The translations under genes were made by a program, and so were the position numbers. The notes under the pieces are model-generated. The model saw only the letters and a program-made list of their open reading frames with translations, searched no databases and was not told the DNA's origin. DNA of 64,000 nucleotides, from contig NIVC01001652.1 in assembly GCA_002269645.1 (NCBI GenBank), positions 62,001 through 126,000 on the forward strand. Direction: 5' to 3'. Origin of the DNA: Macrostomum lignano (lineage: Eukaryota). Positions within the stretch are counted from its first letter, which is position 1. Each line of letters starts with the position of its first letter. Positions 11,270-55,920 of this stretch are shown piece by piece.

Positions 11270-11270
11270 G

Positions 11271-12431: not shown

Positions 12432-12440
12432 GCACCTGAG

Positions 12441-15400: not shown

Positions 15401-15570
15401 GAGCCGGCGATGAGGCCGGCGACGCGGAGTTCGCCAGCTCGGCCCCTGAAGTTGATTCGGGCCAGCCGGCGAGGGACGTCGAATCGCCGCAGATGCGCCG
15501 CTCAGCGCGAACGCGACAGGAACCGGACCGGCTGCTGTACACTAAACCGGGAACTCCCGGATGTGACTGA
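12441..15570 (+). CDS. pol: Pol (protease, RT, RNase H, integrase); originally continuous with gag
   Basis: VDTGA; FSKLDLSECYLQF, RLPYG, RIDD; LAADASSVGIG, EKEALA, TDHQPL; HHCC plus D-D-E (MDFAGP, SDNG, NGLVER). No internal stops. Confidence 0.96.
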
Positions 15571-22181: not shown

Positions 22182-23299
22182 TTTTGTCGGGCTCACGGGC
22201 TATTTCAATAGCTTTTATATTACTCGTAGAATTGGCAAAAGCTTTACGCTTTAACTTGAAAAGTTCGCTGGCGGGGTACGCAGACTGTATACGAGCGTAA
22301 TTCAGAATTAAGCTTTAGTATATTTGAATTTTTTAGTGAAAACGCGATCGAAATCGGTCTAGGATTGCAGTTTGCAGAGCGTTTTACACAGACAGACAGA
22401 CAAATATTAGAGATTTAGTATAGTTGGATACAGTGTGCTGAGTGAGTAATGCTCGCATATATATATACATTTCAAGAGTTGTTTTACAAGGTACTTTGTA
22501 CTTTGTTCGTTAGTGTGATGTACATGTTTGTTATTAAATTGGCGCTCTCCCGTACTGTACAAGGCTGTAGAAACTGTACAAATCTGTACAGCTTCTTTCA
22601 CAAGCCCAACGGCCTTGCTGTACCACGTGGTTCTATTTTTAGAGCTCACATCAGTTCCAAGTCGAAAGGTAAAACCCATGGAATTGTCAAAACGAATTCA
22701 GCATAGTACGTACGAGCTTGTGCTAGCAATCTGCACCACACCCCCGTTGGGGAGACAACAAAGAAAGAATAAAATTTGAATGAACTACAAGGTTTTGATC
22801 ACGTACAGTTGCTATTGTCAGTTTCCAGAGGAAAATGATGTTTAAAGCAAAAAAGCATCAGTCCTGATAGCCAGCTGTCCAGCCTAAGATTTCAGCACCC
22901 CCTTTGAGCTTTGACACCAAACCCTCCCTTTAATTTAAGCCACGGGCTTAAAACCTAACTCTCCCCTTGATGCTTGACCTACTCTCGTACCAACAACTGC
23001 CAATTGACTCTTGGCATCTCAGCAACCCCCATAAGCCACAAAATTTGAGCTTTTCCCGTCTCCTCAGTGTGTTCTTCCTGCTTCTGGGCGGCCTTTCTCA
23101 ACCGGATTTGTCAATCCCCATTAAGCCCAATCGAAACGATCAAATCTTTGCAACCGAGTGGCTTGCTGATGATAAACTGAAACCCATGTCCTGCATTTTG
23201 TTAATCAATTTCCATTTCATTGTGGAATAATAAAGTTGATTTGAATCAGAATTCAGTTCAATTACATTGGAGAATTCTAATCAGCATATAGATAGAGAA

Positions 23300-24374
<1,075 letters not shown>

Positions 24375-24872
24375 AATCAATTTAGGATGGAAGACAATTG
24401 AGGTCACACTTAATTTTAGCTTTCTTTATCAGTCTATGGGTGTGCCCCAACTTGTATGACTAACAATGTACAATATTTTTAGAAATGTATTTTTAGCAAG
24501 TGTGCAATATGTGTAAATTTGCAAAGTAATGGTAATTGCTATAATAAGTACTTTGTGAGTTCCATGTTCAAGCTTTCAACTCTGATTCAGACGCCGCTCA
24601 GGCTTTGGTTGCTCGCAAATTTGGCTTTATTTCATTTTATCGGAAAGAATTTCAGTATCTGATAGATAAAAACAGCAGTTTTTTGAATGCACAATTTATG
24701 AATTTTCACTTTGCACAATTTATTCATTAGTTATACTGTTTCTCGTCGTAAAATGAAACAAACAAAAAACTATAGAATTTTGCCTCACAAATTTATTTCC
24801 GAATAATTACGCTCGTACGATAAAGCACAACATAAACCAATAATACATAACATAAACTACATAAAAAAGCCA

Positions 24873-27663: not shown

Positions 27664-28261
27664 ACTTTATTGTTAACTCTGGGAATATCAAACAAAAGTA
27701 TTTCAAACAATTTTATATTGAGCTCGTGTTAACGTTCTATTAATAGACAGGGCAACTCGGCGTCATGACTCATTCAAGAAAAATTTAATTCATTAATGAC
27801 TCAAAGCACCACTTGTTCGTTTGCTTCTATGCAGAAACTATTTTAGTCAATGACAGGCCCACAAGCCAAGAATTGTGAAATATAAGATAAAATTATGAAT
27901 GAACGAACTACAATGATGCAACGTTATTCGACGTTAAAATTTCGCCAGGTCACACGCTCCTCGTATTTTCGGCGATGATGAATGCCTAGTCACCAAAAGA
28001 GCTTTTCTACATGTAAAAGCGCTGTTCGAAATGAAAAAGACATCAAAATACTGTGGATTCTAAGGTGTGCTTAAGCAGTCTCTCAAAGTTTTTCGGGTCC
28101 AAAACTATGAGTTATGCTTTCTCTACATAATCTTCCCGCTTAATACCAGTTCAAATTTTCGAGTTGCAAACTTTTGTACAATAGATACGAGATCAAAATC
28201 ATATATCTGAGTCTGCTACGTCTCTTGTCTCTATTTCTTCCTAGAAGGTGGAATGAGTAGA

Positions 28262-28592
28262 ACTAGTCATGAGTGAGTCATGAGCAGAACTGGTGATGGG
28301 TGAGTCATGAGCAGAGCTGGTGATAGTTGAGTCATGAGCAGAGCTGGTGATGGGTGAGTCATGAGCAGAGCTGGTGATGAGTGAGTAATGAGCAGAGTTG
28401 GTGATGGGTGAGTCATGAGCAGAGCTGGTGATAGGTGGGTCATGAGCAGAGCTGGTGATGGGTGAGTCATGAGCAGAGCTGGTGATAGGTGGGTCATGAG
28501 CAGAGCTGGTGATGGGTGAGTCATGAGCAGAGCTGGTGATGAGTGAGTAATGAGCAGAGTTGGTGATGGGTGAGTCATGAGCAGAACTAGTT
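28262..28592. repeat. 27-bp minisatellite
   Basis: Unit tcatgagcagagctggtgatgggtgag. Confidence 0.93.
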
Positions 28593-29059
28593 GCTTTAAG
28601 ACAATAGCAAGATAACACTAAATATCTAGTTAGCTCGAACCGTTGGCATTGAAATTAGCTATTCTGAAGAGATTACAGAACCCATTATGAAATTAATCTA
28701 TGACACGCTGCTTCGGCCGTGTCATCGAAAAAGTGCACAATCAATAAGAAATATATACTTTTATATTGTGCCCCGAAAGGGCCGTTTTCTGTTTCAACAG
28801 CGGCGATTAAATTAAGCAAACGAAAAAGAAGAATTCAAATTAATGTAAAGTTATTTCGATTTCTCAAAAACTGTTGCCAGAATGCTCTTACAAAACAGAA
28901 AAAACTTTCAAAAATACTTTCTGTGGAAAATAATACTGAATGAATGAAGATTGCATAATCAATACGAGCGTAATAGTTATCAATAATAATATTTGATTAG
29001 ACCTGCCCCAATTCGCCAGATGTGCAAACGACAGCTCAGCCGCAGTTATTGCGCAGTAG

Positions 29060-29245
29060 GGGGGGGGGAGTCGCCACACACACCCTCAGTTACCCCAGCT
29101 AATGCTGGCACCCACTTTACAGCTGGGTGAACTGAAGCAACGCAGAACTAAGCATCTTGCTCAAGGACACAAATTGTTCCGAGTGGGTCGAGAATCGAAC
29201 CCCCGACCTTTCAGTCGTGAGTCTGACGCTCTAACCACTAGGCAA
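29060..29245 (-). mobile_element. tRNA-derived SINE
   Basis: On the minus strand: A box TAGTGGTTAGAGC, B box GGTTCGATTC, then TGTGTCCTTGAGCAAGATGCTTA...CACCCAGCTGTAAA. This resembles the conserved central domain of V/Meta-type SINEs. Confidence 0.72.
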
Positions 29246-29251
29246 CAATCC

Positions 29252-29433
29252 CACTAGGCTACAACCCCCTCTAGGCTACAACCCCCTCTAGGCTACAACC
29301 CCCTCTAGGCTACAACCCCCTCTAGGCTACAACCCCCTCTAGGCTACAACCCCCTCTTGGCTACAACCCCCTCTAGGCTACAACCCCCTCTAGGCTACAA
29401 CCCCCTCTAGGCTACAACCCCCTCTTGGCTACA
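29252..29433. repeat. 18-bp minisatellite abutting the SINE head
   Basis: Unit ctaggctacaaccccct(c). Confidence 0.92.
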
Positions 29434-29504
29434 ATAGATGGAGGGTTGTAGCCAATAGTCGAGAATGCTTCTAGCATTTTATGATTCATTCAAATATGAA
29501 TAGA

Positions 29505-30273
29505 TTACCGTGCATATTCAACAATCGCAGAGCCAAATCTTCTATAAAAAAGCATGCATTTAAGCTGAGTCATGGGTACTCTCAGGACATGCAGATCTAC
29601 GAACTGACCCATTTTTCTGATACACAATCGAATTCATAACTGTGTTCGCTCGCTGCTCGTTTCCATGGTGATTTGCAGGCTGACTCGCTGACGCAAATTC
29701 GCGCTCTCCTGTCTGCTGAGAAGCTGGAGAGTCGGTTCCAGCTGACTGGCCGGCTGCTGCATCGTGTTGGTTGCCATCGCAACTCGTATGTAGAAACGAT
29801 CTACGCTCTTCATCACAAGGCGACGCTGCTTCGTCGGTGTTGACATCAGGTGGGACAGAAGCTGATGAGCCCTTTGCGGCCTGCCTTTCTCCCTGCCTGG
29901 CTCTGACAAACTTCGTGTACAGCAGAATGAGAGCCAGGATGCTAACTGTCAGAATGGCAGCAAGTACGAGCACTCCGATGACGATCCAAATGGTTGATTC
30001 ATCGGCTGCCTGAGCTGGTGAGCTCACTTTAGCGTCTGGACGCCACTCGTCAGGGGCGCCACTCGGCTTGCCTGTCGAGTTGGCAACGCAGCAGACTGGA
30101 TGGTCGCGACAGGTGCTCAGGTAGTGCATGTGGACTTGGATTTCCGGTGAAGGCAGCGGGCAGCGGAGGCACATCTGCTGGCCCGAGTCGAAGTACTCGC
30201 CAGCCTTTGAGCAGGTGTTGCCGTAAGCTTGAACAGCTAGCAGCAAAGTGAATGGAATTGACAAGATGCTCAT
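29505..30273 (-). CDS. Small TNFR-like receptor R3a (6-Cys ectodomain). Unspliced it stops at 29560; alternatively exons 30273-29609 + 29541-29505
   Basis: MSILSIPFTLLLAVQAYG, then CSKAGEYFDSGQQMCLRC...CRDHPVCC, resembling BCMA CSQNEYFDSLLHACIPC. TM IWIVIGVLVLAAILTVSILALILLY. Confidence 0.78.
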
Positions 30274-30724
30274 GTTGAAGGTCTTGATGACTTTTAATAA
30301 CAATTTCTGTAAGGTTAGGTCTGTGACTTTTTCAACTTTTCAGAGCTCAGAAATATAATGAGTCAGTTCCAGGTTCAATTTACAGTGAATGCTTCACTTA
30401 GAATCTATTTATATCCATTACTCGTCTCAACACTGGTCAGCGGTAGTGCTCAATCTGAGAGCACTGTGGTACACTTGAATACTCAGAGAGCTCATTGCTG
30501 TGTACTCAGGACTGCACATTGCAGAGTACAGTGAGGGCAATTAGCGGTGTACCTCAACGGTAACTGTTGTGTACTGACTTGATAAAACATTTATTATCTA
30601 TTAATTATTAATAATTTATTAGTACTTTTTGCGTATTTTCCTTTCGTTTTTTCCATATGCGGTTGACGTGCTGATGAAATTTGGAGACTTGGCAAGGCTG
30701 CACTGAGGCACAGTGCTGATTGGC

Positions 30725-30875
30725 GCACAGGGGTGTACTGAATACACTAGCGCTTATGTGGAAAATCCGACCTTCTGGCAGAATCGTTGAATATCTCGAC
30801 GGTCCTGAGGACTGGCGACTTGATTCCTGTTTGAGAAGGTGCGCAACAAAAAGTCAGCCCGTGTTCTTGAATTTC
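30725..30875. repeat. Dispersed repeat; copies also at about 35900-36055 (same strand) and about 47888-48040 (inverted)
   Basis: Shared gtactgaatacact..cgcttatg.ggaaaatccgaccttctgg.agaatcgttgaatatctcgacg. Confidence 0.8.
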
Positions 30876-31442
30876 GTGTGCCTGTGTTGCTCCGTTCCGG
30901 CGCAGCAAAAAAATTGTCAGGGGGTCCCCCTTTTGGTAGTTTGACGGGAGGAAAAATGGCTCGCATTGCAAAGCCGCGCCCACACCATTGCAGAGCAGTT
31001 TACAATTCAGAAGTTCAGAAGGCGAGAAATTGGGAATTTAGTTCTAAAAATTATGAAATCTCCCCAATAAATTTCGCAACGCAACGATTTTTTTCAGTCC
31101 ACCATGAGTAATCGTACGAGTATGGCTTATGCATTCGAACTGGTTTAGTTTAAGTTTAAAGAAAGTACAGAGGCTTCTGTCTGCCAGGTTCGTCTTATAC
31201 ATGTATTTCAAATTAGGTTAGGGAAATCACCGAGATTGCTGTTGGTTTTGCAATAAATCAAACCGAATTGTAAAAAAAATCAAGCTTTATCTGACTGAAA
31301 AATGCTCTGAAATGAACATAACATGAATAACCGATCAGGACAAATTATTTGGCTTTTTGATTGAAAGTGCATAACAAAGAAAAATATGGGAGATTATTGC
31401 TTGGATAATACAGTCAACTTTAAGCGAAGTTAGGTGTGACGC

Positions 31443-32120
31443 CTAAGGCACAAACTCGTAGGTACCGGTCGCAGCCGTGCCTTCATCACCATCAGCATTA
31501 ACGGATGGGTTCCGGTTTTCCAGAGCAGTCGAAAGAAGCTGCAGTCTCGCCTCTCCGTCTCGGCCTTCAGGAGAGCCGCTGCCAGTCACCGAGCCGGGCG
31601 CACCAGTGATCTCTGCGGCGTTTCCATCCTCCTCGCCTGTGGCGTTTCCGACCTCCGCGCCTGTCCTGAAGCCGTGCGGTAATTCTTGGCTCTTGTGAGA
31701 AAACTTCCAGACACCGAGCATGATCAAAGCAATGGCCAGGACAGGAGCGGCTGCGCCAAAAACCATCCAACTGGTTGACATCCCCTGGGCCTGGAGCGGT
31801 GAGCTCAAAGTTGTGGTGCCGCTGCTGCAACTGCTGCTGCTGCTGCTGCTGCTGCTGTGCGGCGGCTTCCAGCTGGGAACAGCTGCTGACCCGGATGTCG
31901 TGTTGGCAACGCAGCAGACTGGATGGTCGCGACAGGTGCTGAGGTAGTGCAGGTGGATTAGGATTTCCGATGAAGGCAGCGGGCAGCGGAGGCACATCTG
32001 CTGGCCCGGGTCGAAGTACTCGTCAGGCTTTGAGCAGTTGCGGTTGTTAGCTTGTGCGGCGAGCAGCAGTGTGAATTGAATTGACAAGCTGATGGCAGCA
32101 GCTTTATCGATTTTGTACAT
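31443..32120 (-). CDS. Small TNFR-like receptor R4 (R3-type ectodomain, different TM and tail)
   Basis: CSKPDEYFDPGQQMCLRCPLPSSEILIHLHYLSTCRDHPVCC, poly-Ser stalk, TM WMVFGAAAPVLAIALIMLGVW, tail ending GTYEFVP*. Confidence 0.78.
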   Translation of the reverse strand: MYKIDKAAAISLSIQFTLLLAAQANNRNCSKPDEYFDPGQQMCLRCPLPSSEILIHLHYLSTCRDHPVCCVANTTSGSAAVPSWKPPHSSSSSSSSSCSSGTTTLSSPLQAQGMSTSWMVFGAAAPVLAIALIMLGVWKFSHKSQELPHGFRTGAEVGNATGEEDGNAAEITGAPGSVTGSGSPEGRDGEARLQLLSTALENRNPSVNADGDEGTAATGTYEFVP

Positions 32121-32483
32121 GAAGATCATCGTTCTTGAGTTGTCTGAAGATTTTATTAAGCACTTGACAAGTTTAATGTCTGCTTTTAAAGGTTTATCTA
32201 GACTAAGACAAGTAAAATTTAGTTCCAAGTCCAAAAAGGTTTTTCCGCGGAAAAACCGTGTAGTGTCACGTACATTTATTTATTTATTTTTATAGAGAAT
32301 TCGTTACTTAGGGGCTTTCAGACAGAGATAGCCAGAGCCACTCACAGTGTGTTGAGCGAGATGGAGCGCCATTGTGTCAAGGACTACTTAAGTATTTATT
32401 CTGATATTTGTACAAGGCAGTTACGCAAAAAATGGTTGAATTCAATCAGTTTTATACAATCGCAGTTTTTTTAATTTTTAAGA

Positions 32484-33548
32484 TCAATTTTCAGCATTTT
32501 CAACAGAGCTGAGACGCTCATAGCCAGCATCTGAGGAGCTGTCGATTACCTCCTGAGGCTCAGCGGCGGCAGTTGCGGCTCGAGGCTGCCGATTGCAGCG
32601 CCAGACCATCACCACCAGCAGCCCCAGGAGAAGGACCACCGCTGACCAAGAAGCGACCAGCAAAACCATTGCAAACTGGGTGTCAGTCCTGTCAGTCTCA
32701 CCGGTCGACAGCGTAGATGGCGTCCCGCTGGGGTTCGAACTGGCGGACCGCGGTTCTGCCCAGGTCGCTCCGTCGGGGCATCGGACGCAGAGGTTCTGGC
32801 CGGGGTCGTAGCAGCGGCCTGCGGGCGGGGAGAGGCGGGGGTCGCTAAAGAAATTCTGAAGTCAATTTTGCATTGGCGAATGGCGCGGCCCGGGAACTTT
32901 ATGGGGAATATCGGGAGGGAGTGGTGAATATTGAGGATGGGGGATATCGGGGATGGGGGATATCGGGGATGGGATATCGGGGATGGGGGATATCGGGGAT
33001 GGGATATCGGGGATGGGGGATATCGGGGATGGGGGATATCGGGGATGGGGGATATCGGGGATGGGATATCGGGGATGGGGGATATCGGGGATGGGGGATG
33101 TCGGGGATGGGGGATATCGGGGATGGGGGATATCGGGGATGGGATTTCGGGGATGGGGGATATCAGGGATGGGAATTAAATAAAAAGGGAGTTATCAGAG
33201 ATTGGGAATAACCGGGGATGGTGAATATTGGGGGGATGGGGTTTCTTGGAACACTGCTCGAGCTTAGTTAATGTTAACTAGATTATTAGTAAAAAACATT
33301 TTTTACAACTTTCCAAAGCAATGGAGCATTGGAAAATTTCTATAAAATAGCTCGTAGTGTTGCAATACATATGAATACTTGCGTCAATTTTAATTTTAGA
33401 AACAACACACGTGTGCACATAAGAAAGGGAATAACGTCAATTAGCTTGAAATAAAATTTTATCTACTTGAAAAAAATTAAAAGAAAAAATATTTCGAAAT
33501 GCTTGACTCACCTGGCCGCCCGGAGCAGACAGCAGACCCAGACAGCAT
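32484..33548 (-). CDS. Small TNFR-like receptor R5, apparently without signal peptide; exons 33548-33512, 32818-32484
   Basis: MLSGSAVCSGRPG|RCYDPGQNLCVRCPDG...TM VLLVASWSAVVLLLGLLVVMVW...PQEVID..GYERL. Strong donor CAG|GTGAGT, pyrimidine-rich acceptor, phases match (1). Confidence 0.62.
32935..33240. repeat. G-rich minisatellite (gggatatcggggatgg) in the R5 intron
   Basis: 16-18-bp degenerate units. Confidence 0.9.
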
Positions 33549-33585
33549 AGCGACAGACAGCTTACAGCTGAATTCCCAGCGCGCC

Positions 33586-33594
33586 CAGGTTTAT
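33586..33594 (-). promoter_or_regulatory. Candidate TATA box of R5
   Basis: CTTATAAAC on the minus strand about 40 nt upstream of the ATG at 33548. Confidence 0.35.
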
Positions 33595-34044
33595 AAGCTT
33601 TTGAGGCCAAGTCAGAGATAAGATAGCAAACATGGAGTTTAGTTGGGTGTAATATTATTTAGAGGAAATATATAATTTTTGGTCAAAGTTAGCGATCAAT
33701 AAATTAAGTTATTAAAAATAAATACACTCAGCAACATTGAAAAGTCGCCACTCTATGCGCCACCCAGTGAGCGATTTCTCTTGGACTGTTCTGAAATCAA
33801 AGATACGAGAAAACTGATCGGGGTAGCTTTGATCCGTAGCGTTAACCCTCGCACACCGCCCCCTCCACTTCATTCCTCAACTCAAGTCTGCCCAGGCGTA
33901 GCTAATTTGCGTCACTCGCAAAGATTGAGAGATTTTACCTGCACTCACTCTCAATCTTCTGTGATGGCGACTTTTCGATGTTGCTGAATATACGAGTATT
34001 TGACGTTAGACAAGAGGTCTCTAGGCTGAATATCAAAAATTCTG

Positions 34045-34412
34045 TTAGTTGATGACGGCAGGCTTGTGACGATGGCAGCTACTCGCATGGATTTGTAGGC
34101 TGGCTGGTCTGCGTGACTCTTTGCTGAGATTCCGCAGATTCCGCAGATTCCGCATGTTCCGCAGATTCCGCAGATTCCGCAGATTCCGCAGATTCCGCAG
34201 ATTCCGCAGATTCCGCATGTTCCGCAGATTCCGCAGATTCCGCAGATTCCGCAGATTCCGCAGATTCCGCATGTTCCGCAGGCACCGCAGGCAGTTTACC
34301 AGACGGTCGAGGCTGGTTAGCATTGAATAGTTGAATATCATCACCCTGCTGTCCTTGATCTTCCTTCTCTTGACGCCTGTTAGATCGCGTTGAACGACGC
34401 TTGCAATAGCCA
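34045..34412 (-). pseudogene. Orphan cytoplasmic-tail fragment of an R6-type receptor with (AES)n repeat
   Basis: YCKRRSTRSNRRQEKEDQGQQGD...[13 protein letters not shown](SAE)n is homologous to 36890-37130. It has no ectodomain or TM and is fused directly to the 3' flank of R3b. Confidence 0.7.
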
Positions 34413-34439
34413 ACGTGCATACCGTTTAACGGTTACAGA

Positions 34440-35208
34440 TTACCGTGCAGCTTCAACAATCGCAGAGCCAAATCTTCTATAAAAAAGCATGCATTTAAGC
34501 TGAGTCATAGGTACTCTCAGGATATGCAGATCTACGAACTGACCCATTTTTCTGATACACAATCGAATTCATAACTGTGTTCGCTCGCTGCTCGTTTCCA
34601 TGGTGATTTGCAGGCTGACTCGCTGACGCAAATTCGCGCTCTCCTGTCTGCTGAGAAGCTGGAGAGTCGGTTCCAGCTGACTGGCCGGCTGCTGCATCGT
34701 GTTGGTTGCCATGGCAACTCGTATGTAGAAACGATCTACGCTCTTCATCACAAGGCGACGCTGCTTCGTCGGTGTTGACATCAGGTGGGACAGAAGCTGA
34801 TGAGCCCTTTTCGGCCTGCCTTTCTCCCTGCCTGGCTCTGACAAACTTCACGTACACCAGAATGAGAGCCAGGATTTGAACTGTCAGAAGACCAGCAAGC
34901 ACGAGCGCACCGATGACGATCCAAACGGTTGATTCACCAGCTGCCTGAGCTGGTGAGCTCGCTGTAGCGTCTGGACGCCACTCGTCAGGGGCGCCTCTCG
35001 GCTTGCCTGTCGAGTTGGCAACGCAGCAGACTGGATGGTTGCGACAGGTGCTCAAGTAGTGCAGGTGGACTTGGATTTCCGATGAAGGCAGCGGGCAGCG
35101 GAGGCACATCTGCTGGCCCGAGTCGAAGTACTCGCCAGCCTTTGAGCAGGTGTTGCCGTAAGCTTGAGCAGCTAGCAGCAATGTGATTAGAGCTGACAAG
35201 ATACTCAT
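34440..35208 (-). CDS. Small TNFR-like receptor R3b (recent duplicate of R3a). Unspliced it stops at 34495; alternatively exons 35208-34544 + 34476-34440
   Basis: Nearly collinear with R3a (same Cys pattern, TM and tail), with scattered substitutions. Confidence 0.78.
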
Positions 35209-36629
35209 GTTGAAGTCTTGAAAATTTTTTGTAAGGTTAGCTCTGTGAATCTTTCAAATTTTGTCATACTGGAGCTCAGTATAATAATGAGTCAGTTCCA
35301 GGTACAATGTACAGTAAATGCTTGACTGATAATCTATTTTTACCCATTACCCGTCTCAACTTCGGTCAGTGACAGTGTTTCAATCTGAGAGTGCTGTGAC
35401 ACAGTTGAGCACACAAGAGAGCTCATTGCTGTGTACTCAGAACTGCACAGTGCAGAGTACAGTGAGAGAAATTAGCGGTGTATCTCAACGGTAATGGTTG
35501 TGTACTGCCCTAACAATGTTTTTAGATTAGCTATTCAGTACATGTACTGGACACTTTTTATAGATTATTTTCTTTGTTTATTTTCCTTAAATTTCTACTG
35601 TCAGTAGAGTGACAGATAAAAATTTAGTTTAATTTAGACCAGATATTTTTGTTGTACGAAATGTACGTACATTGTAAGCTTTTTAATTTAAAAAACTCGT
35701 GAGTAAGCTTAAAAGATTCAAACAAAAATGTTGTACATCATTCGTTTGATGACGGAATGTTTGAGTCCATAGTCACCTGGTACCACCCGCTGAAGATCTC
35801 AGAAGACCAACGAAGTCAGAGCTGATGCAGACACATGCGGTTGACGTGCTAATGAAATTTGGAGGCTTGGCAAGGCTGCACTGAGGCGCAGGGCTGATTG
35901 GCGCACAGGGGTGCATTGAATACACTGGCGCTTATGTGGAAAATCCGACCTTCTGGCAGAATCGTTGAATATCTCGACGGTCCTGAGGACTGGCGACTTG
36001 ATTCCTGTTTGAGAAGGTGCGCAACAAAAAGTTAGCCCGTGTTCTTGAATTTCGTGTGCCTGCGTTGCTCCGTTCCGGCGCAGTAAAAAATGTCAGGGGG
36101 TCCCCCTTTTGGTAGTTTGACGGGAGGAAAAATGGCTCGCATTGCAAAGCCGCGCCCACACCATTGCAGAGCAGTTTACAATTCAGAAGTTCAGGAGGCG
36201 AGAAATTGGGAATTTAGTTCTAAAAATTATGAAATCTCCCCAATAAATTTCGCAACGCAACGATTTTTTTCAGTCCACCATGAGTAATCGTACGAGTATA
36301 GCTTATGCATTCGAACTTGTTTAGTTTAAGTTTAAAGAAAGTACAGAGGCTTCTGTCTGCCAGGTTCGTCTTATACATGTATTTCAAATTAGGTTAGGGA
36401 AATCACCGAGATTGCTGTCGGTTCTGCAGTAAATCAAACCGAATTGTAAAAAAAATCAAGCTTTATCTGACTAAAAATGCTCTGAAATGAACATAACATG
36501 AATAACCGATCAGGACAAATTATTTGGTTTTTGGATTGAAAGTGCATAACAAAAAATATGGGAGATTATTGCTTGGATAATACAGTCAACTTTAAGCGAA
36601 GTTAGGTGTGACGCCTAAGGCACAGACTC

Positions 36630-37455
36630 TTAGGTACCAGTCGCAGCCGTGCCTTCATCACCATCAGCATAAGCGGGTCGGTCCCGGTTTTCCAGAGCAG
36701 TCGAAAGAAGCTGCAGTCTCGCCTCTCCGTCTCGGCCTTCAGGAGAGCCGCTGCCAGTCACCGAGCCGGGCGCACCAGTGATCTCTGCGGCGTTTCCATC
36801 CTCCTCGCCTGTGGCGTTTCCGACCTCCGCGCCTGTCCTGAAGCCGTGCGGTAATTCTTGGCTCTTGTGAGAAAACCTTGTGACTCCTTGCTGAGATTCC
36901 GCAGATTCCGCAGATTCCGCAGATTCCGCAGATTCCGCAGATTCCGCAGATTCCGCAGATTTCGCAGATTCCGCAGATTCCGCAGATTCCGCAGGCACCG
37001 CAGGCAGTTTACCAGACGGTCGAGGCTGGTCAGCTTTGAGTAGTTTAGTATTATCACCCTGCTGTTCTTGATCTTCCAGCTCTTGACGCCTGTTAAGATC
37101 GCGTTGAACGACGCTTGCAATAGCAAACGATGGCAATGATGGCGAAAGCAGCCAAAATCAGCACAACAGGTATCACAATTGGTAGGACAATCGCAAGATT
37201 AGGAGAAGACGACAAATTCGAATCGGACTCAGTAGAAACAGACACCGTAGACGCAGCTTCAGTTGATGATGCCGCCCGCTGGGTAGTCAGGCCGTCTCCG
37301 CACTCTCCCAAGTCAATCTCAGCCTGAGTGCAGTGGACGCACCTGTTCTGGCCCGGGTCCCATCGCATGCCCGGCTGGCACACGCTGACTTCGGCGACGG
37401 CCATCAGTGACAGCGGCAACAGCTGCAGCAGAAGCAGACAGTGGCCAGCTGGCAT
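36630..37455 (-). CDS. Small TNFR-like receptor R6, chimeric, with a 1-nt frameshift and stop at 37093-37095
   Basis: MPAGHCLLLLQLLPLSLMAVAEVSVCQPGMRWDPGQNRCVHC...C, TM LAIVLPIVIPVVLILAAFAIIAIV. The downstream frame encodes (AES)n and then a tail nearly identical to that of R4. Confidence 0.68.
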
Positions 37456-37984
37456 TCCGCACTTATCGAATCTCAGCATTTTCAAAGCTTTAATAAAAAG
37501 ACCTGAAACTGTGTGACTCTGCTTATGTCTAAAAATAAGCAGATAAGACCCGCCAGCCAGATATGGAAGTTTCTTAATTTCGCTGAAATCAGAAATTTCA
37601 CTCAAAAAAGCAAATAAAAAACTTTTTGTCAGTTCAATTCTGCAAAGCAGACGGTCCAGAAGCAATGAAGAAAGCGGTACAAATTAATGTGTTTATTTAT
37701 GCTGATGCTTCAGATATCAATATCTGCATCATTTCTAATACCGGTACTCTAAATTTGAGGAATGGAAAACTTTGAAAACTGCGGCTCTGCAATGCAGCTT
37801 GGCAACAGATGGAATTAGAATTGGCAGATTAGCGGAGCACAGAACTGGCTTGACTGCACAATTTCTACGGATTAATTACCTAAACAGCAGACTAACCTAA
37901 TTTTTCTGACTTGATTATGCCTCTTTAATAAGGTAGCTTAGATAGAGACTGCCCAAATCCACCTGTGCAAATCCGGCAACCTCA

Positions 37985-38826
37985 TTGGGATAAATGGGAT
38001 CTCATTGGGATAAATGGGATCTCATTAGGATAAATGGGATCCCATTGGGATAAATGGGATCTCAATGGGATTAATAGCATCACACGGGGATAAATGGGAT
38101 CTCATTGGGATAAATAGCATCACACGGGGATAAATGGGATCTCATTGGGATAAATAGCATCACACGGGGATAAATGGGATCTCATTGGGATAAATAGCAT
38201 CACACGGGGATAAATGGGATCTCATTGGGATAAATAGCATCACACGGGGATAAATGGGATCTCATTGGGATAAATAGCATCACACGGGGATGAATGGGAT
38301 CTCATTGGGATTAATAGCATCACACGGGGATAAATGGGATCTCATTGGGATAAATAGCATCACACGGGGATAAATGGGATCTCATTGGGATAAATAGCAT
38401 CACACGGGGATAAATGGGATCTCATTGGGATAAATAGCATCACACGGGGATAAATGGGATCTCATTGGGATAAATAGCATCACACGGGGATAAATGGGAT
38501 CTCATTAGGATAAATAGCATCACACGGGGATAAATGGGATCTCATTGGGATAAATAGCATCACACGGGGATAAATGGAATCTCATTGGGATAAATAGCAT
38601 CACATGGGGATAAATGGGATCTCATTGGGATAAATAGCATCACACGGGGATAAATGGGATCTCATTGGGATAAATAGCATCACACGGGGATAAATGGGAT
38701 CTCATTGGGATAAATAGCATCACACGGGGATAAATGGGATCTCATTGGGATAAATAGCATCACACGGGGATAAATGGGATCTCATTGGGATAAATAGCAT
38801 CACACGGGGATAAATGGGATCTCATG
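37985..38826. repeat. 40-bp minisatellite immediately 3' of WDR11
   Basis: Unit ggataaatagcatcacacggggataaatgggatctcattg. Confidence 0.95.
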
Positions 38827-38847: not shown

Positions 38848-41800
38848 TCACTCCGTCAGTTTCTGCCCCTCCTTATTTCCGTCTCCAGCAGAGCCCAGCT
38901 CAGCCAGCTCCGCGCACCTGCTGGCACCCGCCTCATCGCCTAGCAGCGCCAGCTGTCGCGCCCAGGCCGCGTGCGCCTCGCGCCAGGCAGCTCGGTCGGC
39001 CGGCTCGGCGCCGGACATGTCCGAGCTGTCCGGAATGCGGCCGGCCTCAGCGCAGGCGGCCAGGAGGCGGCAGGCGAGGCCGGGCAGGCCAAGGCGGCGG
39101 CAAAGGCAGTCGCAGGCGGCCGCCCAGTCGCCCTGGGCGATGAGCAGCAAAGCCGCCTGGCACGGGTCTGTCCCGGCCAGGTGTCCGGCGTGCCTTCGGA
39201 CAATCTCGGCCGCTTCGGCCGGGTCGCGAAGACTGCACTTGGCCAGCCAAAGGGCCGTGCTGCGCTCGCCGTGCTGCTCCAAGTAGCGGCAGGCGTCCAG
39301 CTTGCGGTCGATGAGGCACAGAAGCTGGGCGCCCTCGGACACGCGCCCGTTGGCCATCAGGCTGGTGGCCACGAGCTTCACGGTGCTCTGCGCGTTAGGC
39401 GACGCCGGCTGGTTGGCCAGCAGGCAGGCCAGGTGCAGGTCGGCCAGGTAGGACGGGCTGGCGGGCTCGGTCTCCAGCAGCAGCTGGACGGCCTTGTCCA
39501 GCTGGCCGAACAGCACCAGGCACTCCACCAGCCGCTGCGTCTGCTGCGGGCTAAGCCGGCGCCTGCGGCCGAGCAGACAGGCGAGCCGGCGGGCCTGCCA
39601 GCGCCGGTACACCGGGTGCGGGCTGAGCGAGTCCCAGCCGGCCTCCAGCTCGGCGCTCGGGTCGGCTGACTGCGGCAGGAAGCGCCGGCAGAGCAGCCAG
39701 AAGCGGACCTGGCGTTGGCGGGGGGGGGGGGTGAAGGGGCTAGAGCCGAAGAAGAATGGGGATCACACGGGGAGAACAGTGATCACACAGGGAGAATGAG
39801 GATGACACAAGGAGAATAGGGATCAAAAAATGAGAATAGGGATCACACGAGGAGAACAGGGATCACACGGGGAGAACAGGGATCGCACGGAGAGAACAGG
39901 GATCACACGGGGAGAACAGGGATCACACGGGGAGAACAGGGATCACACGGGGAGAACAGGGATCACACGGGGAGAACAGTGATCACACGGGGAGAATGGG
40001 GATCACACAAGGAGAATAGGGATCACACAAAGAGAATGGGGATCACACGGGGAGAATGGGGATCACACGGGGAGAATGAGGATCACACAAGGAGAATGGG
40101 GATCACACGGAGAGAATGGGGATCACACGGAGAGAATGGGGATCACACAAGGAGAATGGGGATCACACGGAGAGAATGGGGATCACACGGAGAGAATAGG
40201 GATCACACGGAGAGAATGGGGATCACACAAAGAGAATGGGGATCACACAAAGAGAATGGGGATCACACAAAGAAAATGGGGATCACACGGGCAGAATGGG
40301 GATCACACAAAAAGAATGGGGATCACACGGGGAGAATGGGGATCACACAAGGAGAATAGGGATCACACAAGGAGAATGGGATCACACGGAGAGAATGGGG
40401 ATCACACAAGGAGAGAATGGGGATCACACAAGGAGAATGGGGATCACACAAGGAGAATGGGGATCACACGGAGAGAATGGGGATCACACGGAGAGAATGG
40501 GGATCACACGGAGAGAATGGGGATCACACAAAGAGAATGGGGATCACACAAGGAGAGAATGGGGATCACACAAGGAGAATAGGGATCACACAAGGAGAAT
40601 GGGGATCACACGGGGAGAATGGGGATCACACGGGGAGAATGGGGATCACACGGGGAGAATGGGGATCACACGGGGAGAATGGGGATCACACGGTGAGAAT
40701 GGGGATCACACGGGGAGAATGGGGATCACACGGGGAGAATGGGGATCACACGGGGAGAATGGGGATCACACTCACCTCGAAGGGGTCGCAGAACAGCATG
40801 GCGGTGAGTAGGCTTCGGTCTGCAGTGCTCAGGCCCGGCGCTGCCAGCTCGGCCAGCCAGTCCGGATCGAAGCGGCGCAGCAGCTCCCGAGCCTCGTCAT
40901 CCTCGGCGTCGCCGGCCTCCGCCCCGCCGTCGGCCATCAGCAGGCGGTGCTTGGCCAGGCGGACGGCCTTGTCGGAAAACAATCCGGGAATCGCTGGCGG
41001 CCGCTGGAAAGCCGCCGGGTCCGCGGGGGACAGGCAGATCCGCAGCGACATGTCGGTGACGCGGATTAGCCAGTCGGCCGTGAGCAGCAGCGGCTTGTCG
41101 GAGGCGGCCCAGTCGGCATCCAGCAGGTCCGGCAGGTGGCGGGGGCAGCGCGCGCTGGCCATGGCTGTCAGCTTCGTGGCGGTGTCGCGGGCGTCCCACA
41201 GCTCCAGGCCGTTGGGAAACAGTACCAGGAATTTGTAGTTGCCTTTGACGGGCGAGGGTTGGTTGCTACTGAACTCAACCGCCTTGCCAATGCGGCTGTT
41301 CGCTCTGCTACCCTCTCTTCGACCGACCTCTTCTCTCTTTCTTCTTCCATCTCTTCCGCCTTCCCCTCGGCCCTCTCCTCCGCCCTCTCCTCCGCCCTCT
41401 CCTCTGCCCTCTCCTCCACCTTCTTCTCCGCCCTCTCCTCCGCCCTCTCCTCCGCCCTCTCCTCCACCCTCTCCTCCGCCCTCTCCTCCACCTTCTTCTC
41501 CGCCCTCTCCTCTGCCCTCTTTTCCGCCCTCTCCTCCGCCCTCTCCTCCACCCTCTCCTCCACCTTCTTCTCCGCCCTCTCCTCTGCCCTCTCCTCCGCC
41601 CTCTCCTCCGCCCTCTCCTCCGCCCTCTCCTCCACCTTCTTCTCCGCCCTCTCCTCTGCCCTCTCCTCCGCCCTCTCCTCCGCCCTCTCCTCCGCCCTCT
41701 CCTCCACCTTCTTCTCCGCCCTCTCCTCTGCCCTCTTTTCCACCCTCTCCTCCGCCCTCTCCTCCGCCCTCTTCTCCGCCCTCTTCTCCGCCCTCTTCTC

Positions 41801-44800
41801 CGCCCTCTTCTCCGCCCTCTTCTCCGCCTTCTTATCCGCCTTCTTAGCCGCCTTCTTCTCCGCCCTCTCCTCCGCCTTCTTCTCCGCCCTCTCCTCCGCC
41901 TTCTTCTCCGCCTTCTTCTCTGCTTCTTATCCGCCTCCGCCCTCTCCCCCGCCCTCCACATCCCCAGACTCACCGGAGCCGGGCGCGAACTTGAGCCGCC
42001 TGACGCAGCCCCGCTGAGTGGCCACGCTGCGCGATGTTTTACTCTTGAGATCCCAGAGGGCCAGGCCGCCGTCCGTGTCACCGATGACCATCATGTCCGC
42101 CTTCCAGACCACGGCGGACACCCGGCTGAGGGCCGTGTCCGGAGGCAGCCGGGACACCTCCCGGATGATGGAGCCCTCAACGCTGACCAGGGTCATGTGG
42201 CCTTCCTGGTCGAACATGACGAAGTTCTCCCTGGCGAACTGCCCAGCTGGCAACGCGCAGTCGGTGGGGAAGGCGGCCGCTGCGTCTGTCCGGAGAGCGG
42301 CCGGGTCGTCGGCGGCCAGGTGCGAGCGGACGCCGATCTTTCTGGCGGTGGCCCGCTGGGCGGCCGATGCCGAGCCGCCCCATTCCAGGGCGATGGGGCG
42401 GGGGAAGCGGGCGGGCAGCTCGCCGATGAGGGCGAGGGAGCGCAGATCCCAGATCTCGGCCGGCTTGTCGCGAAATCCCAGCGCCAGGTATTGCCTGGGG
42501 ATCATTTTTGAGTAGGTGGAATTGAGAAGAGTTTTATAAGCATGATTCTGGCTGAAAATGTTGTTACACAACCTGTTACAGAGCATATTACAGAACCTGT
42601 TACAGAACCTGTTACAGAACCTTTTACAGAACCTGTTACAGAATCTGCTACAGAACATATTACAGAACCTGTTGCAGAGCCTGTTACATAACTATTTACA
42701 GAACCTGTTACAGAACCTGTTACAGAACCTGTTACAGAACCTGTTACAGAACCTGTTACAGAACCTGTTACAGAACCTGTTACAGAGCCTGTTACATAAC
42801 TAGTAACAGAGCCTGTTACAGAACCTGTTACAGAACCTGTTACAGAACCTGTTACAGAGCCTGTTACATAACTAGTAACAGAGCCTGTTACAGAACCTGT
42901 TACAGAGCCTGTTACAGAACCTGTTACAGAGCCTGTTACAGAACCTGTTACAGAGCCTGTTACAGAACCTGTTACAGAGCCTGTTACAGAACCTGTTACA
43001 GAGCCTGTTACAGAACCTGTTACAGAGCCTGTTACATAACTAGTAACAGAGCCTGTTACAGAACCTGTCCCCAATACAGACCTTGCCGGGGAGACCTCCA
43101 ACAACTCGAGTGGACTCTCGCGGTCCCGTCCGTCGCGGAAGAAGTGCACGGCCCCGGTTGCCAGGTCTACGAAAGCGGCTTCGTTTCGGGCCTTGAAAAA
43201 AGTAAAATGATTTCCTTTGAGAAACATGTCGAAATGGCACAGGTGCAGCAGCAATCATCACACAGGTGCAGCAGAAATCATCACACAGGTGCAGCAGCAA
43301 TCATCACACAGGTGCAGCAGCAATCATCACACAGGTGCAGCAGCAATCATCACACAGGTGCAGCAGCAATCATCACACAGGTGCAGCATCAATCATCACA
43401 CAGGTGCAGCAGCAATCATCACACAGGTGCAGCAGCAATCATCACACAGGTGCAGCATCAATCATCACACAGGTGCAGCAGCAATCATCACACAGGTGCA
43501 GCAGCAATCATCACACAGGTGCAGCAGCAATCATCACACAGGTGCAGCATCAATCATCACACAGGTGCAGCATCAATCATCACACAGGTGCAGCACCAAT
43601 CATCACACAGGTGCAGCACCAATCATCACACAGGTGCAGCACCAATCATCACACAGGTGCAGCACCAATCATCACACAGGTGCAGCACCAATCATCACAC
43701 AGGTGCAGCACCAATCATCACACAGGTGCAGCACCAATCATCACACAGGTGCAGCACCAATCATCACACAGGTGCAGCACCAATCATCACACAGGTGCAG
43801 CACCAATCATCACACAGGTGCAGCACCAATCATCACACAGGTGCAGCAGCAATCATCACACAGGTGCAGCACCAATCATCACACAGGTGCAGCACCAATC
43901 ATCACACAGGTGCAGCACCAATCATCACACAGGTGCAGCACCAATCATCACACAGGTGCAGCACCAATCATCACACAGGTGCAGCACCAATCATCACACA
44001 GGTGCAGCAGCGATCATCACACAGGTGCAGCAGCAATCATCACACAGGTGCAGCAGCGATCATCACACAGGTGCAGCAGCGATCATCACACAGGTGCAGC
44101 AGCGATCATCACACAGGTGCAGCACCAATCATCACACAGGTGCAGCACCAATCATCACACAGGTGCAGCAATCATCACACAGGTGCAGCAGCAATCATCA
44201 CACAGGTGCAGCAGCAATCATCACACAGGTGCAGCACCAATCATCACACAGGTGCAAAACCAATCATCACACAGGTGCAGCACCAATCATCACACAGGTG
44301 CAGCACCAATCATCACACAGGTGCAGCACCAATCATCACACAGGTGCAGCACCAATCATCACACAGGTGCAGCAGCAATCATCACACAGGTGCAGCAGCA
44401 ATCATCACACAGGTGCAGCAGCGATCATCACACAGGTGCAGCAGCGATCATCACACAGGTGCAGCACCAATCATCACACAGGTGCAGCACCAATCATCAC
44501 ACAGGTGCAGCACCAATCATCACACAGGTGCAGCACCAATCATCACACAGGTGCAGCACCAATCATCACACAGGTGCAGCACCAATCATCACACAGGTGC
44601 AGCACCAATCATCACACAGGTGCAGCACCAATCATCACACAGGTGCAGCACCAATCATCACACAGGTGCAGCACCAATCATCACACAGGTGCAGCACCAA
44701 TCATCACACAGGTGCAGCAGCGATCATCACACAGGTGCAGCAGCAATCATCACACAGGTGCAGCAGCGATCATCACACAGGTGCAGCAGCGATCATCACA

Positions 44801-49637: not shown

Positions 49638-49744
49638 GGCAACCAGGTGTGGCGCTAAGAGAATCTGTGCAGCATGAGATGAGGGAGCGCTGGCGACTTG
49701 AGAATACCATGAGTACAACAGGGATTTCTTATCTTCAACTTATC

Positions 49745-51253: not shown

Positions 51254-55920
<4,667 letters not shown>

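What the first reader, a model, noticed from the sequence alone, without database searches (positions are those of the whole stretch)
29500..37455. Ectodomain/tail shuffling creates chimeric receptors
Seen: about 29500-30560 is duplicated at about 34438-35510, and about 30655-31704 at about 35836-36876. R4 has an R3-type ectodomain but its own TM and tail. R6 has a different ectodomain, TM and (AES)n segment, then switches into the R4 tail at FSHKSQELP (shared gttttctcacaagag), which in R4 is just after the TM. An orphan R6-type tail sits at 34045-34412, fused to the 3' flank of R3b. Inference: unequal crossover recombines ligand-binding and signalling modules, as in paired-receptor immune loci.
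Basis: partly seen in the sequence, partly recalled or inferred. Interest (0 to 1): 0.72.

Follow-up and report, generated by a model that had tools for sequence, protein, structure and literature searches.

The report
Fusion gene in flatworm receptor cluster
In a flatworm (Macrostomum lignano) cluster of small membrane-protein genes, a 2.4 kb local duplication landed inside one gene and gave it a neighbour's tail, and later gene conversion scrambled the copies; this is a real but ordinary way of making chimeric genes, with no evidence for an immune "paired receptor" system.

Summary
The window is Macrostomum lignano contig NIVC01001652.1. Downstream of WDR11 lie six minus-strand genes for small type I membrane proteins.

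- **Duplication:** a 2.2-2.4 kb segment (R4 tail, intergenic DNA, R3) occurs twice, at 91-97% identity.
- **R6 chimera:** R6 reads in frame from its (AES)n tract into an R4-type tail at FSHKSQELP.
- **Orphan:** a 5'-truncated R6 remnant sits just after R3b.
- **R4:** it shares a 193 nt ectodomain patch with R3 (dS 0.16). The rest of the two genes is saturated (dS above 1.4).

- R6 in this window carries a +1 T at 37096 that stops it after the TM. It is an intact ORF on the sister contig NIVC01000276.1, which has the same architecture.
- Neither junction lies in extended homology. One shows about 5 nt of microhomology and the other a unique 19 nt palindromic filler. The chimera therefore arose by non-homologous duplication or insertion, not unequal crossover.
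- Site patterns are strongly mosaic (71 runs against 173 expected), which indicates later gene conversion.
- The tails carry no ITIM, ITAM or charged-TM signature.

The BCMA-like TNFR assignment of the ectodomain is only weakly supported.

The parts
29502..30576 (-). Block A2: the R3 gene with its flanks, duplicate of 34437-35507
   Evidence: 91.1% over 1084 nt. The identity is mosaic: upstream region 70-86%, ectodomain and TM 89-97%, tail 99-100%.
29560..30273 (-). R3 ORF, 237 aa unspliced: signal peptide, 6-Cys ectodomain, stalk, TM, tail
   Evidence: The same GT-AG 67 nt intron sites as in the annotated R3b are present.
30654..31704 (-). Block A1: R4 tail-coding region plus 3' intergenic DNA, duplicate of 35832-36876
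   Evidence: 96.9% over 1051 nt.
31443..32129 (-). R4 ORF, 228 aa from MIFMYK; annotated in GenBank as the 231 aa product P0003
31896..32088 (-). R3-type ectodomain patch inside R4, read as a gene-conversion tract
   Evidence: 88% identity to 30073-30265 and 35008-35200. dS is 0.156 inside the patch and 1.46 in the stalk and TM just outside it, with the tail saturated. Both boundaries are sharp.
34079..34420 (-). Orphan: the 5'-truncated R6-type 3' part. It holds the last TM codons, the juxtamembrane region, (AES)17 and the short native end [16 protein letters not shown]. Its ATG is supplied by the junction filler.
   Evidence: 34181-34415 matches 36894-37129 at 93.2%. The juxtamembrane part is 92.5% identical. 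The 9 nt array lies at 34127-34281 with 17.2 copies.
34416..34436 (-). Junction J2: end of the R3b block joined to the start of the orphan. The filler is AACCGTTAAACGGTATGCA, which contains a palindrome.
   Evidence: The filler is unique in the window, with 0 matches expected by chance. A/B homology ends at 34437, 3 nt after the R3b stop codon at 34442-34440.
34437..35507 (-). Block B2: the R3b gene with its flanks
34440..35208 (-). R3b gene as annotated (BOX15_Mlig007536g1, 233 aa): exon 35208-34544, 67 nt GT-AG intron 34543-34477, exon 34476-34440. The unspliced ORF is 34495-35208.
   Evidence: The annotation is transcript-based (PMC5730564).
35832..36876 (-). Block B1: the R4-type tail now serving as the R6 tail, plus 3' intergenic DNA
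   Evidence: The first 63 tail residues are identical to R4. R6 then stops at the position of the Tyr codon of R4's YEFVP.
36876..36880 (-). Junction J1: R6 (AES)n side joined to the R4-type tail, in frame (…SQQGVT|RFSHKSQELP)
   Evidence: The only microhomology is GGAGTC against GGTGTC, 2-5 nt upstream.
36630..37455 (-). R6 chimeric gene: its own signal peptide, a 4-Cys ectodomain, TM, juxtamembrane region and (AES)11 (array 36894-36994), then the R4-type tail. In this window it is split into two frames.
   Evidence: ORFs 37093-37665 and 36630-37136. It is an intact 344-codon ORF on sister contig L002, 7544-8578. Array.
37096..37096 (-). +1 T relative to the orphan and to the sister contig. 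It creates TAA directly after ...CYCKRRSTRS.
   Evidence: It is one of only 4 differences in 3.9 kb between the two contigs, and 2 of those are single-T indels.
33773..37630 (.). Core that is 99.9% identical between the two contigs. It covers R6, block B, the orphan and about 300 nt beyond.
   Evidence: 4 differences in 3858 nt, against 39 in 860 nt of flanks; Fisher p=4e-25.

Best explanation
The locus is a tandem array of lineage-specific genes (R1, R2, R3, R4, R3b, R6) in Macrostomum lignano. They encode small type I membrane proteins with a short Cys-containing N-terminal domain, possibly a BCMA-like single TNFR repeat.

Proposed history:
1. The ancestral order was R6 (ectodomain, TM, (AES)n, short 16 aa end), then R4, then R3.
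2. A copy of the 2.2-2.4 kb segment 'R4 tail + intergenic + R3' came to lie inside the tail-coding part of R6. This happened in one of two ways: a single replication template-switch event, or a 4.9 kb tandem duplication followed by a 2.4 kb deletion.
3. Both resulting junctions are non-homologous. J1 has microhomology and is in frame. J2 carries a 19 nt palindromic filler.
4. The products are an in-frame fusion gene (R6 ectodomain, TM and (AES)n joined to the R4 cytoplasmic tail), a second R3 copy (R3b), and a 5'-truncated R6 remnant whose DNA now lies where the R3b 3' UTR must run.
5. Gene conversion then acted repeatedly: between the two duplicate blocks, between R3 and R4 (the ectodomain patch), and between the two subgenome copies of the locus. 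This gave the mosaic identities.

Shown: the architecture, the junction sequences, the mosaicism, and the presence on two contigs.

Inferred: the order and polarity of events, and the repair mechanism.

Not shown: that the fusion is expressed or functional, or what any of these proteins bind.
For: - **Organism and contigs:**
- **Architecture and identities:**
- **Junctions:** J1 and J2 at base resolution, without extended homology.
- **In-frame fusion:** the R6 ORF is intact on the sister contig.
- **Age of the duplication:** the a/a' juxtamembrane duplicate is 92.5% identical. That is similar to block B against the sister-contig block A (85-94%) and exceeds the roughly 2% subgenome SNP divergence reported in PMC10733133. 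The duplication is therefore probably older than the subgenome split and is shared by both copies.
- **Polarity:** R3 and R4 align across the TM-to-tail boundary (...K-F..., 33% over 67 aa, E=4e-4). The contiguity of R4 therefore looks ancestral and the R6 tail looks acquired.
- **Gene conversion:** informative sites fall in 71 runs, against 173±7.5 in 20000 shuffles, none of which reached the observed value. The R3/R4 patch has dS 0.156 against 1.46 outside it.
- **Transcripts:** R3b, R4, R1 and sister-contig R3 and R2 are in a transcript-derived annotation.
Against: - No outgroup is available. No third subgenome copy and no other Macrostomum species could be reached, so polarity rests on a weak alignment.
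- R6 has no annotated gene model on either contig and no relative in 5.8 billion proteins. In this window it is frameshifted.
- Both contigs come from one Canu plus Pilon assembly of a neopolyploid in which 36% of the assembly length lies in chimeric scaffolds. The 99-100% identity tracts could partly be polishing artefacts.
- Identities of the duplicated parts are heterogeneous (70-100%). No single date fits unless several conversion events are invoked.
Confidence: 0.7

Rival explanations
1. One reading: recurrent unequal crossover (NAHR) between paralogues adaptively recombines ligand-binding ectodomains with signalling tails, as in vertebrate paired-receptor loci.
For: - R3 and R4 have near-identical ectodomain cores with very different stalk, TM and tail.
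- R6 carries the R4 tail.
- Ectodomain and tail site patterns are incongruent.
- The 2.2 kb direct repeats are now a substrate for NAHR.
Against: - J1 and J2 lack homology.
- The R3/R4 patch has two boundaries, which is the signature of conversion.
- The tails have no ITIM, ITAM or ITSM and the TMs have no charged residue.
- Conversion boundaries also fall in intergenic and upstream DNA, not specifically at module borders.
- dN/dS in the patch is 0.5-0.8, which gives no signal of positive selection.
Confidence: 0.15
2. Reversed polarity: R6 with the FSHKSQELP tail is ancestral. After a tandem duplication, a 2.4 kb piece carrying an R3-like promoter, ectodomain and TM was inserted between (AES)n and that tail. 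This insertion created both R4 and the orphan.
For: It needs the same number of events as the preferred model. In the short stretch NRDRPAYADG, the R6 tail resembles sister-contig R4 (NRNRPVYADG) more than window R4.
Against: - R4 aligns with R3 across the TM/tail boundary. This would be coincidence if the tail were foreign to the R4 head.
- The orphan keeps a complete short ending, a stop codon and 3' flank, as expected of a native gene end.
Confidence: 0.15
3. The chimera and the orphan are non-functional by-products (pseudogenes) of structural turnover in a fast-evolving array. No selected 'receptor shuffling' is involved.
For: - R6 is frameshifted in this window.
- R6 is unannotated on both contigs of a transcript-based annotation.
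- R6 has lost R4's terminal YEFVP through a stop codon.
- The orphan lacks a signal peptide and most of the TM.
Against: - The fusion is in frame and the 344-codon ORF is intact on the sister contig.
- The +1 T is one of two single-T indels among only 4 differences and may be a consensus error.
- The GenBank annotation excluded transcripts that overlap repeats, and R6 contains a 9 nt array.
Confidence: 0.35
4. Assembly artefact: subgenome or haplotype copies were mis-joined, or paralogues were homogenised by short-read polishing.
For: - Mlig_3_7 is a Canu plus Pilon assembly of a neopolyploid with three subgenomes. Chimeric scaffolds make up 36% of its length and 93% of read pairs multimap.
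- The tracts that are 99-100% identical between paralogues, and the 3.9 kb core that is 99.9% identical between contigs, are what mis-polishing could produce.
Against: - The two copies in the window differ by 3-30% over hundreds of bases, by a 324 nt against 77 nt indel, and by different flanks.
- The same order and identical J1 and J2 occur on a second contig whose flanks on both sides differ by 4-10%.
- J1 preserves the reading frame.
- The filler is not adapter-like and is unique in the window.
Confidence: 0.07

Closest known systems
Chimeric genes made by local duplication plus fusion (from memory: Drosophila Sdic, formed from adjacent AnnX and Cdic copies by duplication and deletion; jingwei)
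   Same: Two neighbouring parental genes are involved. Duplication is followed by, or accompanied by, loss of the intervening DNA. The junction is in frame and the parental R4 is retained. The new 3' half supplies the stop codon and the 3' flank.
   Different: Here the 5' parent survives only as a truncated remnant. Expression of the fusion is unproven. The array keeps exchanging sequence by conversion.
Vertebrate paired receptors (KIR, LILR, Ly49, SIRP)
   Same: The genes form a tandem cluster. One pair, R3 and R4, has a near-identical ectodomain core but different TM and tail. There is gene conversion between members.
   Different: There is no Ig or C-type lectin domain, no ITIM or ITAM, and no charged TM residue for adaptor pairing. 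No immune context is known. The key junctions are non-homologous.
Single-CRD TNF receptors: BCMA (TNFRSF17), BAFF-R, TACI CRD2; Drosophila Grindelwald and Wengen
   Same: - Small type I membrane proteins with one short Cys-rich repeat.
- The motif C-x5-(Y/F/W/L)-D-x5-6-C-x2-C has the same spacing as the BCMA and TACI hairpin.
- A β-hairpin followed by a helix is predicted.
- The best PDB profile hit and the top 12 Foldseek hits are BCMA, with BAFF-R, TNFR2 and Grindelwald further down the list.
- UniRef names the proteins 'TNFR-Cys domain-containing'.
   Different: - No hit is significant (E 0.13; Foldseek E at least 0.58, on a model with pLDDT 58.6).
- Pfam finds nothing.
- The Leu of the DxL ligand-contact motif is absent.
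- Cys spacing after CxxC differs.
- R1 and R2 have only two Cys.
- Ligand and signalling are unknown.
Concerted evolution and interlocus gene conversion in tandem gene arrays
   Same: There are short tracts of near-identity with sharp two-sided boundaries, blockwise switches of nearest relative, and a low dS confined to the tract.
   Different: Exchange also appears to act between the subgenome copies of a neopolyploid, shown by the 3.9 kb core that is 99.9% identical.

Membership tests
TNFR superfamily cysteine-rich domain (BCMA/BAFF-R/TACI-like single CRD) | Recognised by curated domain models (Pfam TNFR_c6, BCMA-Tall_bind, TACI-CRD2; PROSITE TNFR-Cys) | tested here: inconclusive
   Pfam gives no TNFR-type hit even at E up to 5. 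UniRef names R3b, sister-contig R3 and P0006 'TNFR-Cys domain-containing'. That is an automatic name which I did not recompute.
TNFR superfamily cysteine-rich domain (BCMA/BAFF-R/TACI-like single CRD) | Sequence or fold similarity to solved CRDs | tested here: inconclusive
   A profile of all ectodomains has BCMA as its best PDB hit at E=0.13. A profile of the R3 type only loses that hit. The AF2 model has pLDDT 58.6. Its top 12 Foldseek hits are all BCMA, then BAFF-R, TNFR2 and Grindelwald, but E is at least 0.58.
TNFR superfamily cysteine-rich domain (BCMA/BAFF-R/TACI-like single CRD) | DxL motif at the hairpin tip that contacts APRIL and BAFF (definition from memory) | tested here: not met
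   The Asp is invariant, but the +2 residue is G, S, H or I, never L (P0006).
TNFR superfamily cysteine-rich domain (BCMA/BAFF-R/TACI-like single CRD) | Binds a TNF-family ligand; tail recruits TRAFs or carries a death domain | not testable with these tools
   Only minimal TRAF2-like tetrapeptides are present (TGEE in R4 and R6), which is at chance level. No death domain is found. M. lignano does have about 10 TNF ligand homologues (PMC7519573).
Paired activating/inhibitory receptors | Closely similar ectodomains joined to different TM and tails within one cluster | tested here: met
   The R3/R4 patch has dS 0.156 against 1.46 in the stalk and TM; the tails are unalignable at synonymous sites.
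Paired activating/inhibitory receptors | ITIM or ITSM in one partner; a charged TM residue or ITAM adaptor coupling in the other | tested here: not met
   The regex scan of all tails found none. The TM segments of R3, R4 and R6 contain no K, R, D or E (sequences).
Paired activating/inhibitory receptors | Ig-superfamily or C-type lectin ectodomain; immune-cell expression | tested here: not met
   No such Pfam domain is found. Expression is not testable here.
Product of unequal crossover (NAHR) | Breakpoints lie inside stretches of extended sequence homology between the parents | tested here: not met
   At J1 the parents share only GG(A/T)GTC. J2 has a unique 19 nt filler and the flanks are unrelated.
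Interlocus gene conversion | Internal tracts of high identity with two boundaries; non-random clustering of phylogenetically informative sites | tested here: met
   71 runs against 173±7.5, with 0 of 20000 shuffles as low. Block counts are and the two-sided R3/R4 patch. Caveat: short-read polishing could mimic some 100% tracts.
Chimeric fusion gene from local duplication | Identifiable parents, an in-frame junction and an open reading frame through the fusion | tested here: met
   The ORF is intact on sister contig L002, 7544-8578. In this window it is broken by +1 T at 37096. Transcription was not tested.

The most novel reading that the evidence does not exclude
The array encodes a previously unrecognised family of minimal, BCMA/Grindelwald-like single-CRD TNF receptors in a flatworm. 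The published survey found only one NGFR-like TNFR per platyhelminth, yet M. lignano has about ten TNF ligand homologues. On this reading the family diversifies by swapping cytoplasmic tails and converting ectodomains between neighbours and between subgenomes.
Probability: 0.25. Interest if true: 0.6.

Novelty: new member of a known kind. Interest (0 to 1): 0.38.

Why it matters
The locus is a clean, base-resolved example of how a new in-frame receptor-like chimera arises in a young polyploid animal genome. The route was non-homologous duplication into a neighbouring gene, followed by gene conversion within the array and between subgenome copies.

It would matter more if the proteins prove to be minimal TNF receptors. 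The accepted picture is one TNFR per flatworm, while M. lignano has an expanded set of TNF ligands with no assigned receptors (PMC7519573). M. lignano is transgenic-tractable, so the question could be tested directly.

As it stands, the mechanism is of a well-known kind and function is unproven.

Tried and rejected
- **Pfam:** scans of all six proteins and of isolated ectodomains gave no curated domain, only sub-threshold hits to TM-rich families.
- **Single-sequence phmmer of ectodomains against PDB:** nothing.
- **AF2 of full-length R3b without an alignment:** ectodomain pLDDT below 50, so it was not used for fold search.
- **AF2 with a 6-sequence alignment:** pLDDT 58.6. The Foldseek hits are suggestive but not significant.
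- **Search for an intact 'ancestral' R6 or any R6 relative:** the full-length query found only R4, through the tail, plus low-complexity noise. The ectodomain, TM and juxtamembrane query found nothing in 5.8 billion proteins. Polarity could therefore not be tested with an outgroup.
- **Profile search of 1.84 billion representatives with R3, R3b and R4:** only three clusters, all M. lignano. The family looks lineage-restricted in the available data.
- **Exact look-ups of the unspliced R3b and R4 ORFs in other assemblies:** no record. There is no independent assembly and no transcript contig.
- **Literature search for the gene identifier:** none found.
- **Rejected: the R3/R4 similarity is due only to purifying selection.** Synonymous divergence is ten-fold lower inside the patch than outside it.
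- **Rejected: the two window copies are collapsed alleles.** They differ in structure and both are present on each of two contigs.

Full report
**Identity of the sequence.** The R3b ORF (34495-35208, minus strand) is 100% identical over its first 222 residues (94% of the ORF) to the Macrostomum lignano protein BOX15_Mlig007536g1. A paralogue is BOX15_Mlig007463g1. UniRef calls both 'TNFR-Cys domain-containing'. The gene lies on two contigs of assembly GCA_002269645.1 (Mlig_3_7). L001, from NIVC01001652.1, is exactly the reverse complement of window 24440-45208. L002, from NIVC01000276.1, is a second copy of the locus. The surrounding genes are those of an animal genome: WDR11, a Cys-loop channel, GDPD, an SLC3A2-like gene and a Ty3-like retroelement. 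M. lignano is a neopolyploid with three subgenomes that differ by about 2% in SNPs. The assembly was made with Canu and polished with Pilon, and its GenBank annotation is transcript-derived (PMC10733133; PMC5730564).

**The genes.** Downstream of WDR11, all on the minus strand, lie:
- R6 (37455-36630)
- R3b (35208-34440)
- the orphan (34420-34079)
- R4 (32129-31443)
- R3 (30273-29560)
- R2 (27663-27178)
- R1 (25520-24873)

Each complete gene encodes a signal peptide, a short Cys-containing domain, a Ser/Thr/Pro-rich stalk, one TM and an acidic low-complexity tail. The N-terminal motif C-x5-(Y/F/W/L)-D-(P/S)-x4-5-C recurs in all of them. Pairwise BLASTP links them weakly but consistently:
- R1-R2: 9e-5
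- R2-R4: 3e-3
- R4-R6: 3e-3
- R6-P0006: 1e-4
- R3-R4: 1e-40

**Check of the observation.** Self-BLAST gives the following:
- 30654-31704 matches 35832-36876 at 96.9% over 1051 nt.
- 29502-30576 matches 34437-35507 at 91.1% over 1084 nt.
- 34181-34415 matches 36894-37129 at 93.2% over 236 nt.
- 30073-30265 matches 31896-32088 at 88.6%.

The two large blocks are really one duplicated segment.

One thing was missed. In this window R6 is split into two frames by an extra T at 37096, which gives ...CYCKRRSTRS followed by TAA. The orphan and the sister contig lack this T, and on L002 R6 is one open frame of 344 codons. The T is one of only four differences in 3.9 kb between the contigs, and two of the four are single-T indels. 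I cannot tell a real pseudogenising mutation from a consensus error.

**Junctions.**
- *J1.* R6 follows the orphan through ...TCTCAGCAA(G/A)GAGTCAC (R6 36880, orphan 34113). It follows R4 from 36876 (GTTTTCTCACAAGAGCC, R4 31704). The parents share only GG(A/T)GTC just upstream. The frame is kept: SQQGVT-RFSHKSQELP. After (AES)17 the orphan continues with its own short end, [16 protein letters not shown] and a stop codon.
- *J2.* Homology between the R3 and R3b 3' flanks stops at 34437, three bases after the annotated R3b stop codon (34442-34440). Next comes AACCGTTAAACGGTATGCA, which contains a palindrome and is unique in the window. R6-type sequence then starts at CGTT(G/T)GCTATTGC, within the last TM codons.

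Neither junction lies in extended homology. This argues against unequal crossover. It fits end-joining or replication template switching.

**History.** In gene orientation the present order is: R6 head, a, J1, B, J2, a', t, intergenic DNA, R4 head, A.
- a and a' are the duplicated TM-end, juxtamembrane and (AES)n piece.
- A and B are the two copies of the 2.2-2.4 kb segment.
- t is the native R6 end.

Two routes give this order with the two observed junctions:
1. One template-switch event that copied A into R6.
2. A 4.9 kb tandem duplication (a through A) followed by a 2.4 kb deletion.

Polarity was tested only indirectly. R3 and R4 align across the TM/tail boundary (…K-F…, 33% over 67 aa, E=4e-4), so the head-to-tail contiguity of R4 looks ancestral and the R6 tail looks acquired. 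No outgroup could be found.

**Age and the second contig.** L002 has the same order and identical junctions.
- The juxtamembrane duplicate a/a' is 92.5% identical.
- Block B against sister-contig block A is 85-94% identical.
- Both figures exceed the genome-wide subgenome divergence of about 2%. The duplication therefore probably predates the subgenome split.
- Yet the core 37630-33773 (R6, B and the orphan) differs at only 4 of 3858 positions between the contigs. The flanks differ at 39 of 860 positions (p=4e-25) and by about 10% further out.

I read the near-identical core as recent homogenisation between subgenome copies. An artefact of consensus polishing remains possible.

**Mosaicism.** A four-way alignment shows blockwise switches of the nearest relative. 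Counts of singleton informative sites are:

| Segment | Nearest relatives | Supporting sites |
|---|---|---|
| R4 tail | window A with B | 19 of 27 |
| R4 3' intergenic | window A with B | 23 of 28 |
| R3 upstream region | sister A with B | 63 of 72 |
| R3 codons 1-120 (signal peptide to TM) | the two A copies together | 23 of 31 |
| R3 tail | window A with B | 21 of 25 |

The site types fall into 71 runs, against 173±7.5 in 20000 shuffles, none as low. Part of the L run comes from a poorly aligned stretch.

For R3 against R4:
- The 62-codon patch has dS 0.156 and dN 0.113.
- The stalk and TM have dS 1.46.
- The tail is saturated.
- The patch has sharp boundaries on both sides, which makes it a conversion tract.

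**What the proteins are.**
- Pfam finds nothing.
- A profile of all ectodomains has BCMA (TNFRSF17) as its best PDB match at E=0.13. An R3-type-only profile loses that match.
- AF2 with a six-sequence alignment predicts a β-hairpin plus a helix at pLDDT 58.6.
- The top 12 Foldseek PDB hits of that model are all BCMA ectodomains, followed by BAFF-R, TNFR2 and Grindelwald. None is significant, with E at least 0.58.
- The Leu of the DxL ligand-contact motif is absent.
- Another M. lignano locus encodes an R3-like protein, P0006/P0007.

Assignment to the TNFR superfamily is therefore plausible but unproven. If it is true, it would add to a literature that reports one NGFR-like TNFR per platyhelminth and about ten TNF ligand homologues in M. 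lignano (PMC7519573).

**Signalling and the paired-receptor analogy.**
- The tails contain no ITIM, ITSM or ITAM.
- The only Tyr motif in the R4 tail (YEFV) is removed from R6 by a stop codon.
- The TM segments have no charged residue.
- dN/dS in the patch is 0.5-0.8.

The analogy therefore rests only on 'similar ectodomain, different tail' and is otherwise unsupported.

**Verdict.**
The genes are real chimeras with incongruent module histories, but the mechanism is wrong and there is no evidence for an immune or signalling reading.
- Kind: a new example of well-known processes, namely fusion by duplication plus gene conversion in a tandem array.
- Interest is moderate-low. It would rise if the TNFR reading and expression of the fusion are confirmed.

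Noticed in passing
window 33773-37630 compared with L002 7579-11436: A 3.9 kb core (R6, R3b and the orphan) is 99.9% identical between the two subgenome or haplotype contigs. The flanks differ by 4-10%. This is either recent inter-homeologue conversion or a polishing artefact.
   Followed up: partly
window 34416-34442: The annotated R3b stop codon lies 3 nt before the duplication junction, so the R3b 3' UTR must run into the R6 remnant. The junction filler also creates an ATG in frame with the orphan, giving a 113-codon ORF.
   Followed up: partly
window 11228-15570 (+): Ty3/gypsy-like retroelement: a gag-like ORF (weak Ty3_capsid and zinc-knuckle hits) followed by a 1031-codon pol-like ORF. 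Its LTRs and intactness were not examined.
   Followed up: no
window 37861-38825, 39749-40771, about 43238-45875: Long minisatellites (20, 20 and 23 nt units, up to about 115 copies) lie around and inside the WDR11 gene. Its exons are GC-rich, for example 38848-39612, 41927-42658, 45887-46555 and 48483-49718 on the minus strand.
   Followed up: no
window 20883-22196 (-): A 437-codon ORF encodes a signal peptide, nine copies of a 17 aa repeat (GSGHTRKLISRDADPQI, 51 nt unit) and a TM. It may be another member of the membrane-protein array, but it lacks the Cys motif.
   Followed up: no
window 23120-24400; 29216-29470; 32873-33211; 28199-28630: Dense micro- and minisatellites (8, 17, 14-16 and 27 nt units) lie between the array genes. 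The switch from about 4% to about 10% divergence between the contigs falls at the 32873-33211 array.
   Followed up: partly
P0006/P0007 (BOX15_Mlig031515g1 and BOX15_Mlig025388g1, other M. lignano contigs): An R3-like protein at another locus. It has the same CRDHPVCC core. Its tail carries VIYDEV (ITIM-like) and several other Tyr motifs that the window genes lack.
   Followed up: partly
window 1179-2632 (+), 5651-6184 (+), 54012-55920 (-): Exons of a Cys-loop ligand-gated channel, of a GDPD-family phosphodiesterase, and of an SLC3A2 (4F2hc)-like gene. The last is interrupted by a 21 nt-unit coding-looking repeat.
   Followed up: no
L002 13178-13870 compared with window 31443-32129: The R4 alleles or homeologues differ within the converted patch: KAGEYFDP, as in R3, against KPDEYFDP. 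Their C-termini also differ (…GTYETVFAVTS against …GTYEFVP). This suggests separate, ongoing conversion events.
   Followed up: no
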